Sequence record: PQ471516.1
DNA: 64,000 bases
Strand: one strand, 5' to 3'
Positions within the stretch are counted from its first letter, which is position 1; each line of letters begins with the position of its first letter. The notes beneath the pieces were generated by a model that saw only the letters and a program-made list of their open reading frames with translations, did not search any database and had not been told where the DNA came from. The translations under genes and the position numbers were made by a program. Of the stretch, positions 3,808 through 47,852 are shown in pieces.

Positions 3808-4103
3808 ATGAGGAAGATTTAAGAATATTAACCCTCTATAGCAATCATTCGATAATTTTATATGAGATGGTTTATGAATACAAATACAGCGAGTATCCTT
3901 TATTTGATTTAGTACTGGATTTTTATAACGAAGTACGTGACAAATATTACGGTAAACCCATTGTAATATTAGATGATACATTTTATATAGCAGCAGTGTA
4001 TGGTTCATTAAATGGTATATTCTTTGATTTGAAATCGGATCTTAAATCAAAACATTTTGATGATAGTTTGTATATTTCGGAGATACCAAAATGTCGAATT
4101 TAA
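3804..4103 (+). CDS. hypothetical protein, YxGKxV family
   Basis: ATG at 3804 overlapping previous stop (ATGA) preferred to 3771; DKYYGKPI motif. Confidence 0.55.
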   Translation: MNEEDLRILTLYSNHSIILYEMVYEYKYSEYPLFDLVLDFYNEVRDKYYGKPIVILDDTFYIAAVYGSLNGIFFDLKSDLKSKHFDDSLYISEIPKCRI

Positions 4104-28205: not shown

Positions 28206-30008
28206 ATGCAACTAGATAAACTTTACACGGACGTGACTAATTTCCTCAATCAGAACAATTCTGACCTAACCAACGAAAACGCGAATAAGGATGCTAAATG
28301 TGTCAATACCCATAGAGACTTGCTTGCAGGTATTCTTTCTAAACACTATTCACAAGATGTTATTGCACCCGACCTGATGCAATGGCATAATGATGGATAT
28401 GGTCATATTCATGATTTGGACTACTATATTAGCCCGTTAACTAACTGTTGCTTAGTAAATTACCCTGATATGCTCAAGAACGGTTTTACTATTGGCTGTG
28501 CCAAAATTGAAGAACCAAAGAGTTTCAGTGTAGCGTGTACAGTACTGACACAGATTGTTCAAGCTGTCGCTAGTTCCCAGTACGGTGGTCAATCACTGGC
28601 ACATATTGATGTTGGTTTAGAACCATACGTCGAAAAGTCATGGAATAAGCTATTAGCTAAACAAAAGAAATACAATCTAAGTACTGAATATATTGAAGAA
28701 GAATTACGTAAAGAAGTATATGATGGCTGTCAAACTCTCCTGTACCAGACTAACTCTATGATTAGTACCAATGGTCAGGCTGCATTCATTTCTTTAAGCT
28801 TAGGACTGAATACTTCCAAATTTGGCAAACTAATCACTGAACAGTACTTAAAAGTACATGAAAATGGTTTAGGTGTTAATAAGATCACTCCGGTGTTCCC
28901 TAAAGTGATTTTCTTTTTACAAGATGGCATTAACATGAATCCAAAGGATATTAGCTACGATATGAAGCAATTGGCTATGCGTTGTGCTTCTAAGCGTATA
29001 TACCCTGATTTCGTTAGTGTTCCACTAAATCACAAGGTTACTGGGGCATCAAGTGCTGTTACTCCTATGGGATGCCGAAGCTTCTTAGGTAAATGGGAAG
29101 ATGCTAATGGAAACGAACAGTACAATGGTCGCTTCAACTTAGGTGTAGTGTCTATCAACTTACCGCTAATTGCTCTTGAAAGCACTTCAGATGGTGATTT
29201 CTTTGATAAGATAGACGAGCACATGAATATTGCGTACAGAGCACAGATGAACCGTGTAGAGCGTTTAAAAGGTACTAAGGCTAAACAGAACCCTATCCTG
29301 TTCATGGAAGGTGCTCTTGCTCGTCTTGGTGCAGAAGAAACTATTGACAAACTCTTCTACGATGGTTATGCTAGTATCAGTATTGGATATGTAGGATTAG
29401 TTGAATGTTCAGAGATTTTGACTGGTTCAATCAGTAAAGAGTTCTGCATGTCAGTACTGAATTATATGAAAGTGAAATGTGATGAATTCAAGAACGAGAG
29501 CAATATAGCCTTTAGTCTATACGGAACTCCTGCTGAATCATTATGTTACAAGTTTGCCCGTTGTATCGAGGCAAAACACCCATCAGTACTAAAACGTGAC
29601 TACATTACAAACTCATTCCATCAACCTGTATGGGTTGAGAGTACTCCATTCGAGAAGTGGGTTTATGAAGAAGGGTTTGCATATTTGAGTGCAGGTGGTA
29701 ACATTAGCTACGTCGAGTCACCAAATCTTTCAAACAACATACAAGCACTAGAAACACTAATAAACTACGCATATACTAAGATTCCTTACTTTGGCATCAA
29801 CCAACCAGTGGATCGTTGTTATGAGTGTAATTTTGAAGGTGAGTTCAGTGTTGATAAGCACGGGTTCCATTGTCCAGTTTGTGATAACAGAAATGAGAAA
29901 ACCATCTCTGTAATTCGTCGTGTATCTGGATACTTAGGAAATCCGTCTTCCCGTGGTTTTAACAAGGGAAAACAGCAAGAATGTTGTGAGAGAGTACAAC
30001 ACAAATAA
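28206..30008 (+). CDS. nrdD: anaerobic (class III) ribonucleotide reductase large subunit
   Basis: HIHDLDY, LTNCCLV, QYGGQ, MGCRSFL, RFNLGVVSINL, YGTPAESL, two CxxC and glycyl-radical RRVSGYL; no ATP-cone. Confidence 0.96.
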   Translation: MQLDKLYTDVTNFLNQNNSDLTNENANKDAKCVNTHRDLLAGILSKHYSQDVIAPDLMQWHNDGYGHIHDLDYYISPLTNCCLVNYPDMLKNGFTIGCAKIEEPKSFSVACTVLTQIVQAVASSQYGGQSLAHIDVGLEPYVEKSWNKLLAKQKKYNLSTEYIEEELRKEVYDGCQTLLYQTNSMISTNGQAAFISLSLGLNTSKFGKLITEQYLKVHENGLGVNKITPVFPKVIFFLQDGINMNPKDISYDMKQLAMRCASKRIYPDFVSVPLNHKVTGASSAVTPMGCRSFLGKWEDANGNEQYNGRFNLGVVSINLPLIALESTSDGDFFDKIDEHMNIAYRAQMNRVERLKGTKAKQNPILFMEGALARLGAEETIDKLFYDGYASISIGYVGLVECSEILTGSISKEFCMSVLNYMKVKCDEFKNESNIAFSLYGTPAESLCYKFARCIEAKHPSVLKRDYITNSFHQPVWVESTPFEKWVYEEGFAYLSAGGNISYVESPNLSNNIQALETLINYAYTKIPYFGINQPVDRCYECNFEGEFSVDKHGFHCPVCDNRNEKTISVIRRVSGYLGNPSSRGFNKGKQQECCERVQHK

Positions 30009-30015
30009 GGTACAT

Positions 30016-30345
30016 ATGTGCGATTTGAAACCAATAGTTGTTAACAAATACAAAGAACAGTATGATGTGTACATTGGTCGTGGGTCGAAATGGGGAAATC
30101 CATTCACCCACATTAAAGACAAGGAAACTAAGGCAGAATTCATTGTTGCTACCCGTGAAGAGTCCATTGAGAAGTTCAGAGACTATATTCTTGAACGTAT
30201 CGAAAAGGGTGAAGTCCAAATTGATGAACTCCTTGAACTCACTGGGAAACGTCTTGGTTGCTTTTGTAAGCCCAAATCATGTCATGGTGATGTTCTTGTT
30301 GAAATAGTGAGTGCTATACTAGATGAACTATCAGACGATAATTAA
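30016..30345 (+). CDS. DUF4326 family protein
   Basis: VYIGRGSKWGNPF and LGCFCKPK.CHGDVL; start at 30016 (SD AAGG) preferred to 29953. Confidence 0.8.
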   Translation: MCDLKPIVVNKYKEQYDVYIGRGSKWGNPFTHIKDKETKAEFIVATREESIEKFRDYILERIEKGEVQIDELLELTGKRLGCFCKPKSCHGDVLVEIVSAILDELSDDN

Positions 30346-46331: not shown

Positions 46332-46729
46332 TGCTTAAAGATTTAGATTTTTCAAATTTAGAGATCATCAGTGCAGTGAAGAATATTACTGATATGGATG
46401 ATGAAAAAGGTGTAATGGTAACTATCACTTTCGTAAAGGAAGAGGATAGCTATAAGCATCTTACTGGAATTGAAGAACTAATCCACAAGACCAATCTCGA
46501 AAACGATGGTAAGCTTATCAAGCTTCAGGCATCCTATTCCCAAAAAACGTCATTTTTTGTAGACCTAAATAATGTAGTCAAGGTGGTATACAATCATCCT
46601 GACAACAAATACAGAAGCACAACACGAAACGAAGAAGCAGCCATCGACACTAATATCAAAGATGATGTCGAATTTGTTAATACAGTTTTTGAGCGTTGTG
46701 CACCTGAATTGAAAAAAGTATACTTATAG
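46331..46729 (+). CDS. hypothetical protein
   Basis: ATG at 46331 overlapping previous stop. Confidence 0.6.
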   Translation: MLKDLDFSNLEIISAVKNITDMDDEKGVMVTITFVKEEDSYKHLTGIEELIHKTNLENDGKLIKLQASYSQKTSFFVDLNNVVKVVYNHPDNKYRSTTRNEEAAIDTNIKDDVEFVNTVFERCAPELKKVYL

Positions 46730-46730
46730 T

Positions 46731-46760
46731 TTGGGAAATACTCCAGAAAAGTGCTATAAT
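46731..46760 (+). promoter_or_regulatory. extended -10 promoter driving the non-coding unit
   Basis: TTGGGA-N18-TATAAT with TG-C-TATAAT extended -10. Confidence 0.6.
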
Positions 46761-46765
46761 GTATA

Positions 46766-47288
46766 GTGAAAATGACAATGGGCGGTGTAAGCCGGATAAC
46801 GAGAACCTAATTCTCTTGAAAATGTAAAGGATAGATGAGCTTTACCATTGTAGCGAAGTGCAGAAGAAACCCGTTAGAGTACTAGCAGCCATTCAAACAA
46901 GGCATAAGAACTACGAATCACGGCAATGCGGCACTATAAAGAACTCCGACAGCATAACAGAGAGTTCCTAGATAGACATATAAGGATCGCACCTTACCAG
47001 ATTTGCTAAGGGAGTTTAACTCAATAAATGCGGTCGCAATTTTTCACAAGAAAGTTGCGTCCAAATTTTGAGTAAACAAGTACTACTTTGGTCGAATAGA
47101 GTTAGTACTTTGTGCTGGGGATGAAAAGACCAGTGACCGTTGCATATGACTGCGATAGAGAGAAACAGAGCAACCCGCTTTCGTTCTCTTAAATTAGACG
47201 AGAAAGATCCGTCTAAAATTTGAGAAATTCGCAATTCGACAATTCCGATGCCATCAGCGTCAAGAAGAGACTTAATTGTCTCTTTTTT
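46766..47288 (+). ncRNA. candidate large structured non-coding RNA (~520 nt), family unassigned
   Basis: No + strand ORF of 60 aa or more; promoter upstream and terminator downstream; about 12 hand-identified helices including a multi-way junction and a GUAA tetraloop. Confidence 0.6.
47265..47288 (+). terminator. Rho-independent terminator
   Basis: AAGAGAC-TTAATT-GTCTCTT TTTT. Confidence 0.8.
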
Positions 47289-47293
47289 ATTAC

Positions 47294-47429
47294 TTTCATT
47301 CCCCTGCGGGGGGATGAAATGTCCTCAACAAATCCCGTCAAGCTTTTAAAGTACAATATAAAGGAATGAATGAGTTTACGAAGTAAACGATATGAATTCT
47401 TGAGTTACGAAGGAACGAAGTGAATGAGT
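47294..47429. repeat. GC-rich hairpin followed by short direct repeats
   Basis: 11 bp stem 47294-47319; GAGT(T)TACGAAG at 47372 and 47402; GAATGAGT at 47368 and 47422. Confidence 0.5.
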
Positions 47430-47852
47430 AACACAGCGAATATTTCAAATAAATCTGAATTCACACAAGAGTTGTTTAATGTGTTTTTCAAATATCAAAT
47501 ATTAGAAGAGAGTCAATGCTTTCAGCTTTATTACAAACAAGTCGGTAGTACATACAACAACTACAAAGAACCTAATTTTTATAAAGAAATTTTGGATTTT
47601 GCAGTTAATATAAGAAATAACAGACCAATAGCAATACTGTTTTTTGACAGATCTATTCCAGTAGAAGTACCTAATCACATTTACTTCATTGAACCAGAAG
47701 ATTTATCTTCAAAGAATCAATTAGATTACTTAAGGAATTGTATACTGATAGTATGTGATGAAGTGAAGTATAACCGTCAGTTGAGATGGGATATACGTCA
47801 TCAAAGAGTACTCACGGACATGAATCCCGAATTAGCCTTTATAATTAACTAA
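47424..47852 (+). CDS. hypothetical protein
   Basis: 142 aa ORF. Confidence 0.5.
   Translation: MSNTANISNKSEFTQELFNVFFKYQILEESQCFQLYYKQVGSTYNNYKEPNFYKEILDFAVNIRNNRPIAILFFDRSIPVEVPNHIYFIEPEDLSSKNQLDYLRNCILIVCDEVKYNRQLRWDIRHQRVLTDMNPELAFIIN

What the first reader, a model, noticed from the sequence alone, without database searches (positions are those of the whole stretch)
46766..47288. Candidate ~520 nt large structured non-coding RNA with its own promoter and terminator
Seen: by far the longest non-coding gap in an otherwise wall-to-wall coding window, bracketed by an extended -10 promoter (TGcTATAAT, 46752-46760) and a terminator (47265-47288). Helices found by hand: ACAATGG 46775-81 / CCATTGT 46845-51, enclosing three hairpins (CGGT-GTAA-GCCG with a GNRA loop 46783-94; GAGAA/TTCTC 46801-15; GTAAAG/CTTTAC 46824-45); AGTGC 46857 / GCACT 46931 enclosing CCGT/ACGG; GAACTC/GAGTTC 46941-67; CCTTA/TAAGG 46992-47011; GTTTAACTCAA/TTGAGTAAAC 47014-77 enclosing a 12 bp helix 47032-62; AAGTACTA/TAGTACTT 47078-110; CTGG/CCAG 47115-33; helices at 47139-56, 47158-90 and 47194-216; then three tandem AATTC units 47224-47. 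Established: bacteria and phages encode large ornate ncRNAs of unknown function (ROOL, GOLLD, OLE classes). Inference: a transcribed, highly folded RNA that may belong to one of these classes or be new. It is not a tRNA, tmRNA or RNase P as far as I can recognise.
Basis: partly seen in the sequence, partly recalled or inferred. Interest (0 to 1): 0.88.

Follow-up and report, generated by a model that had tools for sequence, protein, structure and literature searches.

The report
New large pseudoknotted jumbo-phage RNA family
The gap holds a gene for a roughly 520-580-nucleotide, intricately folded non-coding RNA that matches no family in Rfam 15, is present in four copies in this jumbo coliphage, and also occurs in small defence-carrying islands in bacterial chromosomes, which makes it a strong candidate for a new class of large functional RNA.

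Summary
The window is Escherichia phage Turkey5, a 351-kb jumbo phage of the 121Q/PBECO4 type. The gap, promoter and terminator are real.

The region is one of four paralogues in this genome. About 72 related jumbo-phage records hold 1-5 blastn-detectable copies. Single copies sit in roughly 10-kb islands of Enterobacterales chromosomes that carry an integrase and defence genes.

On 53 non-redundant homologues, a 126-pair model that includes three pseudoknotted interactions is 85% paired, against 70% in shuffles. Its covariation score is 0.40, against 0.15 in shuffles and 0.06-0.11 in slid controls. Frequent G·U pairs assign the fold to the + strand.

No open reading frame (ORF) is conserved, and no Rfam 15 family matches. 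The conserved RNA runs past the terminator to about 47342, and the terminator hairpin is an optional insertion.

The promoter (TGrrAC box plus TGnTATAAT) is conserved across the family. In Turkey5 it also precedes replication genes.

Best reading: a new family of free-standing, ribozyme- or RNP-like RNA. Main rival: a primer or origin RNA that islands use to hitch-hike on jumbo phages. Transcription and function are untested.

The parts
46732..46760 (+). Promoter: TGGGAA box (46732-46737) about 15 nt upstream of the extended -10 TGCTATAAT (46752-46760). The predicted start is near 46766.
   Evidence: The promoter scan finds it. The same TGrrAC box plus TGnTATAAT layout precedes nearly all 53 homologues. 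It occurs 22-23 times in Turkey5 against about 1 in shuffles, including in front of replication genes.
46766..47342 (+). The full conserved RNA, about 577 nt. A short form would end at the internal terminator near 47288, giving about 523 nt.
   Evidence: Alignments of 4, 23 and 53 homologues show it. nhmmer envelopes cover it. GC content is 41%, against 30-35% in the flanking genes.
46775..46854 (+). 5' pseudoknot domain.
- P1: 46775-81 with 46845-51
- P1a: GNRA-capped hairpin, 46783-94
- P2: 46807-09 with 46832-34, and 46815-17 with 46827-29, with the conserved loop GAAAAUGUA
- Conserved GAUGAG
- P3: 46839-41 with 46852-54, which crosses P1
   Evidence: P2 is 91-97% paired and P3 100% paired, both with double changes. 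P1 forms at least 6 bp in 40 of 53 sequences, in at least 12 sequence versions.
46857..47077 (+). Central domain.
- P4: 46857-61 with 46931-35
- P5: 46871-74 with 46920-23, around a variable insert
- P6: 46941-46 with 46962-67
- P7: 46981-85 with 46992-96
- P8: 47014-17 with 47074-77, and 47019-24 with 47068-73
- P8a: 47032-39 with 47055-62
- Near-invariant joining strands (AGAAACCCGU, CACGGCAAUGCGGC, GAUAGACAUAUAAGG, UAAGGGAG)
   Evidence: Percent paired is P4 99%, P5 98%, P6 94% and P7 84%, with many compensatory changes. P8ii and P8a are poorly aligned, at 55-58%. Invariant columns are listed.
47078..47261 (+). 3' core with nested pseudoknots.
- P9 hairpin: 47078-47110. Its loop (47091-96) pairs with 47235-40 (PK1).
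- P10: 47113-18 with 47130-35
- P11: 47139-43 with 47170-74
- P12: 47151-55 with 47229-33
- P13: 47158-62 with 47178-82. P11 crosses both P12 and P13; P13 lies nested inside P12.
- P14: 47184-88 with 47222-26, holding an inserted hairpin at 47194-47216
- P15: a small hairpin at 47247-61
   Evidence: Percent paired is PK1 98.7% (6 of 6 pairs changed on both sides), P11 100%, P12 99.2% (5 of 5 pairs), P13 100%, P9 88% and P14 87%. P15 is not resolved in this alignment, at 42%. The helices were first detected.
47264..47289 (+). P16: an intrinsic-terminator-like hairpin (47264-71 with 47278-85) followed by a U run. It is an optional insertion within the family.
   Evidence: The terminator scan finds it. 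The spacer between P15 and P17 is 29-39 nt in 29 of 53 members, 0-9 nt in 22 and 19 nt in 2. Paralogues A and C of this same genome lack the hairpin.
47295..47342 (+). P17: a 10-bp hairpin, UUCAUUCCCC-UGCG-GGGGGAUGAA (47295-47318). It is followed by a linker and the conserved tail CAACAAAUCCCGUCAAG (47326-47342).
   Evidence: It is conserved in all 53 members. The 3' arm is nearly invariant, while the 5' arm varies through G·U and C-G exchanges. It directly abuts P15 in members that lack P16.

Best explanation
This is a gene for a free-standing, highly structured RNA of about 520-580 nt. It belongs to a family that matches nothing in Rfam 15. I found no description of it in the searched literature.

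Inferred from sequence: host RNA polymerase starts near 46766, at a promoter made of a TGrrAC box and an extended -10. The same promoter class stands in front of the phage's DNA-replication genes, so the RNA is probably made together with them.

Shown by covariation: the transcript folds into three parts.
- A 5' pseudoknot domain (P1-P3).
- A central multi-helix domain (P4-P8).
- A 3' core, in which P11 crosses both P12 and P13, and the P9 loop pairs with a distant strand (PK1).

About 150 near-invariant, mostly unpaired nucleotides sit between helices that vary freely.

A terminator hairpin, P16, stops part of the transcripts at about 47288. Read-through adds a conserved G-rich hairpin and tail, ending at about 47342.

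My commitment (inference): the folded RNA itself is the product. It acts in trans, like a ribozyme or an RNP/assembly scaffold of the ROOL, GOLLD or OLE type. Its conserved pseudoknot core binds or acts on a macromolecule common to all its carriers, which points to a host component or a nucleic acid. The four paralogues keep the same core but have different peripheral helices and different PK1 sequences.
For: - Paralogues. Turkey5 has exactly four, each in its own intergenic gap with its own promoter.
- Distribution. About 72 jumbo-phage records carry it, as do 63 metagenome loci, 33 IMG/VR loci and 8 bacterial-genome loci.
- Fold. The 126-pair model is 85.3% paired against 69.7% in shuffles. 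Covariation is 0.399 against 0.152, reached by 0 of 500 shuffles, and slid controls give 0.06-0.11. P3, P4, P11, P12, P13 and PK1 are 99-100% paired with compensatory changes.
- P1 pseudoknot. It appears in at least 12 sequence versions.
- Strand. G·U is the commonest pair at several positions, so the fold belongs to the + strand RNA and not to DNA or the antisense strand.
- Folding energy: z = -3.9.
- Composition: GC is 41%, against 30-35% in the flanks.
- Not coding: no ORF is positionally conserved.
- Not a leader. Copy D is followed by convergent genes. Island copies converge on the repressor gene.
- No shared protein. No protein is common to the islands and the phage, which argues for a host or nucleic-acid partner.
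- Promoter. It is conserved across the family and enriched 22-fold in Turkey5, in front of the polymerase, clamp, SSB, primase, RNR and topoisomerase genes.
Against: - No transcript has been observed. I found no RNA-seq study of this phage clade.
- No catalytic or binding activity can be inferred from sequence.
- No known ribozyme or RNP family matches.
- The conserved module downstream of an apparent terminator is odd for a simple trans-acting RNA. So is the family's status as a core part of small non-autonomous islands. Both facts fit a cis role in element propagation at least as well.
- P8ii, P8a, P15 and P16 are poorly supported in the MAFFT alignment.
Confidence: 0.55

Rival explanations
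1. Origin or primer RNA, with island hitch-hiking. The locus is a replication origin of the T4 oriF/oriG or ColE1 RNA II kind. A replication-class promoter makes a structured transcript whose 3' part (G-run hairpin plus tail, next to AT-rich DNA) primes or marks DNA synthesis. The phage has four such origins. Small islands carry one copy, so an infecting jumbo phage amplifies them and packages them by the headful. By my recollection, T4-origin plasmids are replicated and transduced by T4 in this way (Kreuzer and Alberts, 1985). That paper was not checked here.
For: - The promoter class is shared with the DNA polymerase, clamp, SSB, primase, RNR and topoisomerase genes.
- Four dispersed copies sit at about 54, 109, 192 and 305 kb.
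- A single copy is a core feature of roughly 10-kb islands that have an integrase and defence cargo but no recognisable replication or packaging genes.
- Island copies nest among jumbo-phage copies in the tree.
- The terminator is optional and would meter read-through into the conserved 3' module.
- Downstream DNA is AT-rich, at 31% GC.
- Satellites of jumbo phages now have a precedent (PMC12595487, PMC12772148).
Against: - Primer RNAs are not known to need conserved double pseudoknots or about 150 invariant unpaired bases.
- GC skew of the RNA is only 0.05, so it is not prone to R-loops.
- Cumulative GC skew shows no inflection at the copies and simply follows gene direction.
- The terminator lies upstream of the putative priming module.
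- The 286-aa island core protein has no known function and could be an initiator.
Confidence: 0.22
2. Decoy or sponge in phage-host conflict. The RNA binds and neutralises a host factor, such as a nuclease, an immune sensor or an RNA-binding regulator. One version would be an RNA anti-CRISPR in which the 3' hairpin mimics a CRISPR repeat.
For: - The carriers are all conflict-related elements: lytic jumbo phages and defence islands.
- No element-encoded protein partner is shared.
- The P17 region gives faint matches to CRISPR-repeat models on the minus strand, at E = 5-7.
- From memory, UUCCCC...GGGGAU resembles type I-E repeats.
Against: - The CRISPR-repeat matches are at chance level and on the wrong strand.
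- The flanks of the hairpin are base-paired here, whereas the handles of a CRISPR repeat are single-stranded.
- The hairpin is equally conserved in a Xanthomonas phage.
- A 580-nt pseudoknotted fold is far more than a decoy of known type needs.
- An anti-defence RNA as the core of defence islands is counter-intuitive.
Confidence: 0.1
3. A cis-regulatory leader or attenuator, in which a large sensor plus terminator controls the downstream genes.
For: In the window the RNA is followed by a terminator and then by co-directional genes.
Against: - Downstream genes differ between the paralogues.
- Copy D and the island copies are followed by convergent genes.
- About 40% of members have no terminator hairpin.
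- Copy C is followed by a separate consensus promoter for the next gene.
Confidence: 0.04
4. There is no functional RNA. The region is a chance-structured spacer, a small protein gene or a purely DNA-level repeat.
For: Some records annotate hypothetical proteins over it.
Against: - Compensatory changes are far above both the shuffled and the slid controls.
- G·U pairs are strand-specific.
- No ORF is conserved.
- The region is conserved from Escherichia phages to Xanthomonas phages.
Confidence: 0.02

Closest known systems
ROOL (RF03087) and GOLLD (RF01998) RNAs
   Same: These are large (more than 500 nt), ornate, stand-alone RNAs of unknown function that are carried mainly by phages and prophages. 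They have many conserved unpaired nucleotides and long-range contacts. They are now known to form RNA-only multimers (10.1101/2024.12.08.627333).
   Different: Neither covariance model matches, even at E up to 10. The hosts here are phages and islands of Gammaproteobacteria. The RNA is not next to tRNA genes, and the window has none. Each genome keeps up to four or five diverged paralogues. The helix layout is different. Multimerisation is untested.
OLE RNA (RF01071)
   Same: It is about 600 nt long, with very high sequence conservation interspersed with covarying helices. It is thought to act as an RNP.
   Different: OLE is a chromosomal gene of extremophilic Firmicutes, with dedicated oap partner genes. 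There is no model match here, and no protein partner is shared among the carriers.
T4 replication origins oriF/oriG and ColE1 RNA II (named from my own knowledge)
   Same: A non-coding transcript is made from a replication-phase promoter. T4 has several origins per genome. RNA II is about 550 nt, and its fold matters. By my recollection, plasmids with a T4 origin are amplified and transduced by the phage, a possible model for the islands.
   Different: Those RNAs have no conserved multi-pseudoknot core. This RNA has no G-rich skew. A terminator precedes its putative priming module. There is no sequence similarity.
phi29 pRNA
   Same: It is a phage-encoded structured RNA whose function depends on loop-loop pairing that covaries. 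PK1 here could in principle form between molecules.
   Different: pRNA is about 174 nt, present as a single copy and part of the packaging motor of a small phage. These jumbo phages have T4-type terminases. There is no homology.
ncRNA001-004 of jumbo phage PA5oct (PMC7318152)
   Same: These are abundant non-coding transcripts of 236-619 nt, found by RNA-seq in a jumbo phage distantly related to the RaK2/121Q group. There are four per genome.
   Different: nhmmer with the family profile finds nothing significant in the stretches holding ncRNA001, 002 and 004. Its only match has E = 2 and lies outside the annotated ncRNAs. The core motifs are absent. ncRNA003 was not fetched. No structure has been reported for them.
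I55-type satellites of jumbo phages (PMC12595487; commentary PMC12772148)
   Same: These are integrase-bearing islands with defence cargo and no transfer genes, shown to be transduced by a jumbo phage. How they are recognised, replicated and packaged remains open.
   Different: They are Pseudomonas elements of 20-70 kb that integrate at tmRNA. No shared RNA is reported. The islands seen here are about 10 kb, sit in Enterobacterales, and have not been shown to be mobilised.

Membership tests
ROOL / GOLLD / OLE / raiA / HEARO (large bacterial ncRNA classes in Rfam) | Match to the family covariance model at or near the gathering score | tested here: not met
   The whole window gave 0 matches at gathering threshold. 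For 46600-47500 at E up to 10, only chance-level hits to unrelated small families appeared. For 15 homologous loci at E up to 5, nothing fell on the RNA.
ROOL / GOLLD | Association with phages or prophages, often next to tRNA genes | tested here: inconclusive
   The association with phages and mobile islands is met. tRNA adjacency is not met. The window has no tRNA, and the Turkey5 tRNAs lie at 286-292 kb, away from all four copies.
ROOL / GOLLD | Self-assembly into RNA-only multimers | not testable with these tools
   This needs cryo-EM, native gels or mass photometry on the transcribed RNA. PK1 covaries, but covariation cannot separate pairing within one molecule from pairing between molecules.
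RNase P RNA, tmRNA, SRP RNA, 6S RNA | Covariance-model or ARAGORN match | tested here: not met
   Searches found nothing. My remembered resemblance of ACAGAGCAACCCGCUUUCG and CCUAGAUAGAC to conserved blocks of RNase P was a lead only. No RNase P model scored at E up to 10.
Group I / group II introns and small self-cleaving ribozymes | Model match; location inside a gene with flanking exons (introns); conserved catalytic core (ribozymes) | tested here: not met
   No model matched. All copies are intergenic with their own promoter. The CAGAUGAG...CGAAA stretch departs from the hammerhead core, with A in place of the conserved U, a different element order and a non-conserved GAA (read).
CRISPR repeat / RNA anti-CRISPR (solitary repeat unit) | Repeat-like hairpin with single-stranded handles that matches the host's CRISPR repeat | tested here: not met
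   Only E = 5-7 matches appeared, on the minus strand. The flanks of the hairpin are paired. Host repeats were not compared directly.
T4-type origin (oriF/oriG) or ColE1-type primer RNA | Transcript from a replication-phase promoter | tested here: met
   The TGrrAC plus TGnTATAAT promoter class is shared with the polymerase, clamp, SSB, primase, RNR and topoisomerase genes. This is an analogy. The timing of this promoter class has not been measured.
T4-type origin (oriF/oriG) or ColE1-type primer RNA | Persistent RNA-DNA hybrid at a DNA-unwinding element; origin activity in cis | tested here: inconclusive
   Downstream DNA is AT-rich at 31% GC, but the RNA shows no G-rich skew (0.05). Cumulative GC skew is uninformative. 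Origin activity needs a plasmid replication assay.
Cis-regulatory leader / riboswitch | Always upstream of, and co-directional with, the regulated genes; an expression platform is present | tested here: not met
   Copy D and the island copies face convergent genes. The terminator hairpin is absent in about 40% of members.

The most novel reading that the evidence does not exclude
The RNA locus is the module through which small islands parasitise jumbo phages. These islands are about 10 kb, carry an integrase and defence genes, and sit in Enterobacterales chromosomes. In the phage, the RNA would be a structured origin or primer RNA, or a replication-phase recruiting RNA, present four times per genome. 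An island that carries one copy under the same phage-type promoter would be amplified and packaged by the headful when a phage of the 121Q, RaK2 or GAP32 type infects. That would give the newly discovered jumbo-phage satellites their first molecular handle, and it would be an RNA one.
Probability: 0.2. Interest if true: 0.95.

Novelty: new variant of a known kind. Interest (0 to 1): 0.86.

Why it matters
Large, highly conserved, pseudoknotted RNAs of unknown function are rare, and they have repeatedly led to new biochemistry. RNase P, group II introns, OLE and the ROOL/GOLLD cages are examples.

This family is found mainly in phages and islands of Enterobacterales, including laboratory-tractable coliphages. 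One of them, Sharanji, plates on E. coli K-12 MG1655. It has deep comparative support, and each genome offers a natural series of four diverged paralogues. Genetics, structure probing and cryo-EM are therefore immediately feasible.

The family also links lytic jumbo phages to small defence islands by a shared RNA gene with a shared phage-type promoter. That bears directly on questions raised in 2025: how do satellites of jumbo phages sense, replicate with and get packaged by their helpers?

In addition, public records often carry spurious 'hypothetical protein' calls over these loci.

Tried and rejected
- **Rfam 15.** I searched at gathering and permissive thresholds on the window, the region, 8 bacterial loci and 15 homologous loci. 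Nothing fell on the RNA.
- **RNase P, group I intron and hammerhead resemblances.** These came from reading the sequence and from memory. No model supports them, so I dropped them.
- **CRISPR-repeat or anti-CRISPR reading of the 3' hairpin.** The matches are at chance level, on the wrong strand, and the flanks are paired.
- **Homology to the PA5oct ncRNAs.** None was found for ncRNA001, 002 or 004. ncRNA003 was not fetched.
- **A protein partner shared by the islands and Turkey5.** tblastn finds only a DUF4326 protein of one island, and no common partner.
- **Function of the island core proteins.** Pfam, PHROGs and NCBIfam say nothing useful about the 286-aa family.
- **Plasmids (PLSDB).** No match.
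- **GC skew as evidence for an origin.** It is uninformative, because skew follows gene direction.
- **Conserved ORFs.** None.
- **RNAalifold consensus alone.** It recovers only the nested helices. The pseudoknots had to be found by a column-pair scan.
- **Covariance model.** I did not build one, because the RNA exceeds the size that the tool can calibrate. nhmmer profiles were enough to collect homologues.
- **Literature.** Searches for a prior description in jumbo-phage, Asteriusvirus, RaK2 and structured-RNA papers found none. Two searches were wasted on poorly chosen terms.
Full report
**Where we are.** The window is identical to Escherichia phage Turkey5, PQ471516.1, positions 62001-126000. 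Turkey5 is a 351-kb jumbo myovirus of the 121Q/PBECO4 (Asteriusvirus) type. Window position plus 62000 gives the genome position.

**The observation.**
- The record annotates no gene between 46729 and 47424. Only short mechanical ORFs occur there.
- The scan finds a sigma-70-type promoter with an extended -10 at 46731-46760, and the only terminator-like site in 2 kb at 47262-47287.
- The + strand folds at -139.8 kcal/mol, against -115.6 ± 6.2 for dinucleotide shuffles. That is z = -3.9. The - strand gives z = -3.0.

So the gap, the promoter, the terminator and the above-chance foldability are all real.

**It is one of four paralogues of a wide family.**
- blastn reported four places per genome in about 70 related jumbo phages.
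- In Turkey5 the other copies lie at about 54.0 kb (A), about 192.1 kb (D, beside endonuclease VII) and about 304.9 kb (C, directly after an RpoS-like sigma gene). The window copy is B. A profile search finds exactly four.
- Position is conserved across genera. The RaK2 copy follows its sigma-factor gene. The Munch and Hallingskeid copies lie beside the endonuclease VII and baseplate genes.
- A 21-base degenerate core pattern retrieved 33 IMG/VR loci, 63 metagenome loci and 8 bacterial-genome loci. Most of these, and all eight bacterial loci, are full-length profile matches.
- Among sequenced phages, the family occurs only in jumbo genomes longer than 310 kb. Their hosts are Escherichia, Klebsiella, Salmonella, Erwinia, Yersinia, Serratia, Cronobacter, Pectobacterium and Xanthomonas. 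The one exception is a 23-kb record, Klebsiella phage phiKp_21, apparently partial, which matches a 46-nt stretch of the core.
- No plasmid in PLSDB matches.

**Structure.** I aligned 53 homologues that are less than 96% identical to one another and scanned column pairs for stacked, covarying pairs. The resulting model has 126 pairs.
- 85.3% of cells are paired, against 69.7% in shuffles.
- 968 cells changed on both sides, against 303 in shuffles.
- The covariation score is 0.399 against 0.152, and 0 of 500 shuffles reach it.
- Controls with the partner slid by 1-3 columns give 0.06-0.11.

Helices P3, P4, P11, P12, P13 and PK1 are 99-100% paired and carry many compensatory changes. Three interactions are pseudoknotted:
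- P1 crosses P3. P1 forms at least 6 contiguous pairs in 40 of 53 sequences and appears in at least 12 sequence versions, such as ACAAUGG/CCAUUGU, CUGCUUGG/UCAAGCAG and CUGAUUGA/UCAAUCAG.
- The loop of P9 pairs with a strand about 140 nt downstream (PK1). All six pairs covary, and the four Turkey5 paralogues each have a different PK1 sequence.
- P11 crosses both P12 and P13.

At several positions G·U is the commonest pair, for example 36 G·U against 17 A-U in P13. The antisense strand and duplex DNA cannot keep such pairs, so the fold belongs to the + strand RNA. Between the helices lie about 150 near-invariant nucleotides.

As a negative control, the five reader helices that my model contradicts show no signal: 61.1% against 60.5% paired, and 0.092 against 0.095 covariation. 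P8ii, P8a, P15 and P16 are poorly resolved in the MAFFT alignment.

**Boundaries.** Conservation does not stop at the terminator. A 10-bp hairpin at 47295-47318 has a nearly invariant G-rich 3' arm. The tail CAACAAAUCCCGUCAAG, ending at 47342, is present in all members. The terminator-like hairpin P16 is an insertion. The spacer between P15 and P17 is 29-39 nt in 29 of 53 members, 0-9 nt in 22 and 19 nt in 2. Paralogues A and C and three of the five bacterial copies in the 53-member alignment are among those with no hairpin. The other two carry an inserted hairpin that is not followed by a U run. The window copy can therefore give a form of about 523 nt and, by read-through, one of about 577 nt. 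No consistent terminator follows the tail.

**What it is not.**
- No Rfam 15 family matches. I tested the window at gathering threshold, the region at E up to 10, and 23 further loci.
- ARAGORN finds no tRNA or tmRNA in the window.
- No ORF is conserved in position, strand or length.
- It is not a leader. Copy D and the island copies are followed by convergent genes.
- nhmmer finds nothing significant in the fetched PA5oct stretches that hold ncRNA001, 002 and 004 (PMC7318152).

**Promoter.** Almost every member is preceded by a TGrrAC(a) box about 15 nt upstream of TGnTATAAT. In the islands the -10 is TATACT. In Turkey5 this composite motif occurs 22-23 times, against about 1 in locally shuffled sequence. 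It stands in front of the four RNA genes. It also stands in front of the genes for DNA polymerase, sliding clamp, SSB, primase, RNR-beta, topoisomerase and a 5'-3' exonuclease. I infer that the RNA is expressed with the replication genes. This has not been measured.

**Islands.**
- Serratia fonticola: the RNA lies beside a large serine recombinase and two ParB/RepB-like genes, next to rof and tilS.
- Enterobacter chinensis and relatives: a roughly 10.5-kb insertion sits in the pilin gene ppdD. It carries a UvrD-like helicase, DarT and an ADP-ribosylglycohydrolase. It also carries a resolvase, LprI, a 286-aa protein of unknown function, an HTH_35 protein and a CI-like S24 repressor. The RNA comes next, then a large serine recombinase.
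- Buttiauxella and strain RIT714: a tyrosine integrase replaces the serine recombinase.
- E. coli: 2 of 5426 complete genomes carry a roughly 10.7-kb island downstream of ffs. It has an integrase remnant, the RNA, a homologue of the 286-aa protein and DUF4326/DUF488/dual-OB genes.

The RNA is thus part of the island core, not of the cargo. No protein is shared between the islands and the phage. In a tree of the 53 RNAs, island copies nest among jumbo-phage copies (XaC1 and a 349-kb metagenomic phage) with 98% SH-aLRT support. That implies exchange between the two kinds of element.

**Mechanism.**
- *Shown:* a conserved, strand-specific, multi-pseudoknot RNA fold with a conserved promoter.
- *Inferred and preferred (0.55):* the folded RNA is itself the product and acts in trans as a ribozyme-like or RNP/assembly-scaffold RNA. 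Its invariant core engages a partner common to all carriers, which points to a host component or a nucleic acid.
- *Main rival (0.22):* a structured origin or primer RNA, comparable to T4 oriF/oriG or ColE1 RNA II. This would explain several facts:
  - the replication-class promoter;
  - the four dispersed copies;
  - the optional terminator in front of a conserved 3' module;
  - the single copy in islands that lack replication and packaging genes.

  By my recollection, T4 replicates and transduces plasmids that carry a T4 origin. I did not check that here. Satellites of jumbo phages were first demonstrated in 2025, and their recognition and replication remain unexplained (PMC12595487, PMC12772148). 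Against the rival stand the elaborate conserved fold, the lack of G-rich skew and the uninformative GC skew.
- *Minor rivals:* a decoy or anti-defence RNA (0.10), a leader (0.04), and no function (0.02).

**Novelty.** No Rfam family matches, and I found no description in the searched literature. The nearest kinds are the large ornate RNAs ROOL, GOLLD and OLE. The resemblance is one of kind only, because the membership tests fail. I rate it a new class within a known kind. It would become categorically new if the link between origins and satellites, or a new catalytic activity, were shown.

**Limits.**
- There are no expression data.
- The MAFFT alignment is imperfect in variable hairpins.
- The shuffle control ignores phylogeny, although the slid control and the failed reader helices argue that the signal is real.
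- Copy numbers outside Turkey5 come from blastn.
- The island survey covers only a handful of loci.

Noticed in passing
window 687, 6876, 14897, 46732 and 55547 (+ strand); also 17 further sites elsewhere in PQ471516.1: A phage promoter class, TGrrAC box about 15 nt upstream of TGnTATAAT, occurs 22-23 times in Turkey5 against about 1 in shuffles. Outside the window it precedes the DNA polymerase, clamp, SSB, primase, RNR-beta and topoisomerase genes. The box is not a good sigma-70 -35 element, so it may be read by a phage factor. A sigma-like gene lies just upstream of RNA copy C.
   Followed up: partly
L121-L124 (e.g. L121:3100-13590); L036: A roughly 10.5-kb integrative island splits the type IV pilin gene ppdD in Enterobacter chinensis and relatives. 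It carries a DarT toxin, an ADP-ribosylglycohydrolase and a UvrD-like helicase (a DarTG-like defence set). It also carries a CI-like repressor, an HTH_35 protein, a resolvase, a large serine recombinase and the RNA.
   Followed up: partly
L118:15900-26600 (E. coli LR-29-1, NZ_AP027515.1): A roughly 10.7-kb island lies immediately downstream of ffs (4.5S RNA). It has an IS3-disrupted integrase, the RNA inside a 1.4-kb unannotated gap, a homologue of the 286-aa island core protein and DUF4326/DUF488/dual-OB genes. It is present in only 2 of 5426 complete E. coli genomes.
   Followed up: partly
window 29992-30324 (+ strand): The phage encodes a homologue of the DUF4326 protein found in the E. coli island (38% identity over 122 aa, E = 2e-16). 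It is the only protein shared between any of the islands and Turkey5.
   Followed up: no
window 47040-47066 and 47194-47222; L034:3790-3830 and 3925-3960 (- strand): A sub-module of the form [stem]-UACAAUAUAG-[stem]-CCGUCCAAAAUUU occurs in P8a. In some members (the window copy, BF, CBB, the Serratia islands) it occurs a second time as the insertion in P14. This looks like an internal duplication of a structural motif.
   Followed up: no
L025, L029, L031, L034, about 20 nt upstream of the P2 loop: The island/XaC1 subfamily has a perfectly conserved UGGUAUAAU inside the RNA, between P1a and P2. It could be an internal second promoter or a conserved RNA element.
   Followed up: no
121Q gene 516 and 'hypothetical protein' calls in many records: Several public annotations place one to six hypothetical-protein genes over the RNA loci. 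Given that no ORF is conserved, these are probably false gene calls.
   Followed up: partly
window 47286-47321 (- strand): Rfam gives faint matches (E = 5-7) to CRISPR repeat models DR37 and DR57 on the minus strand of the P17 hairpin. I judged them to be chance.
   Followed up: yes
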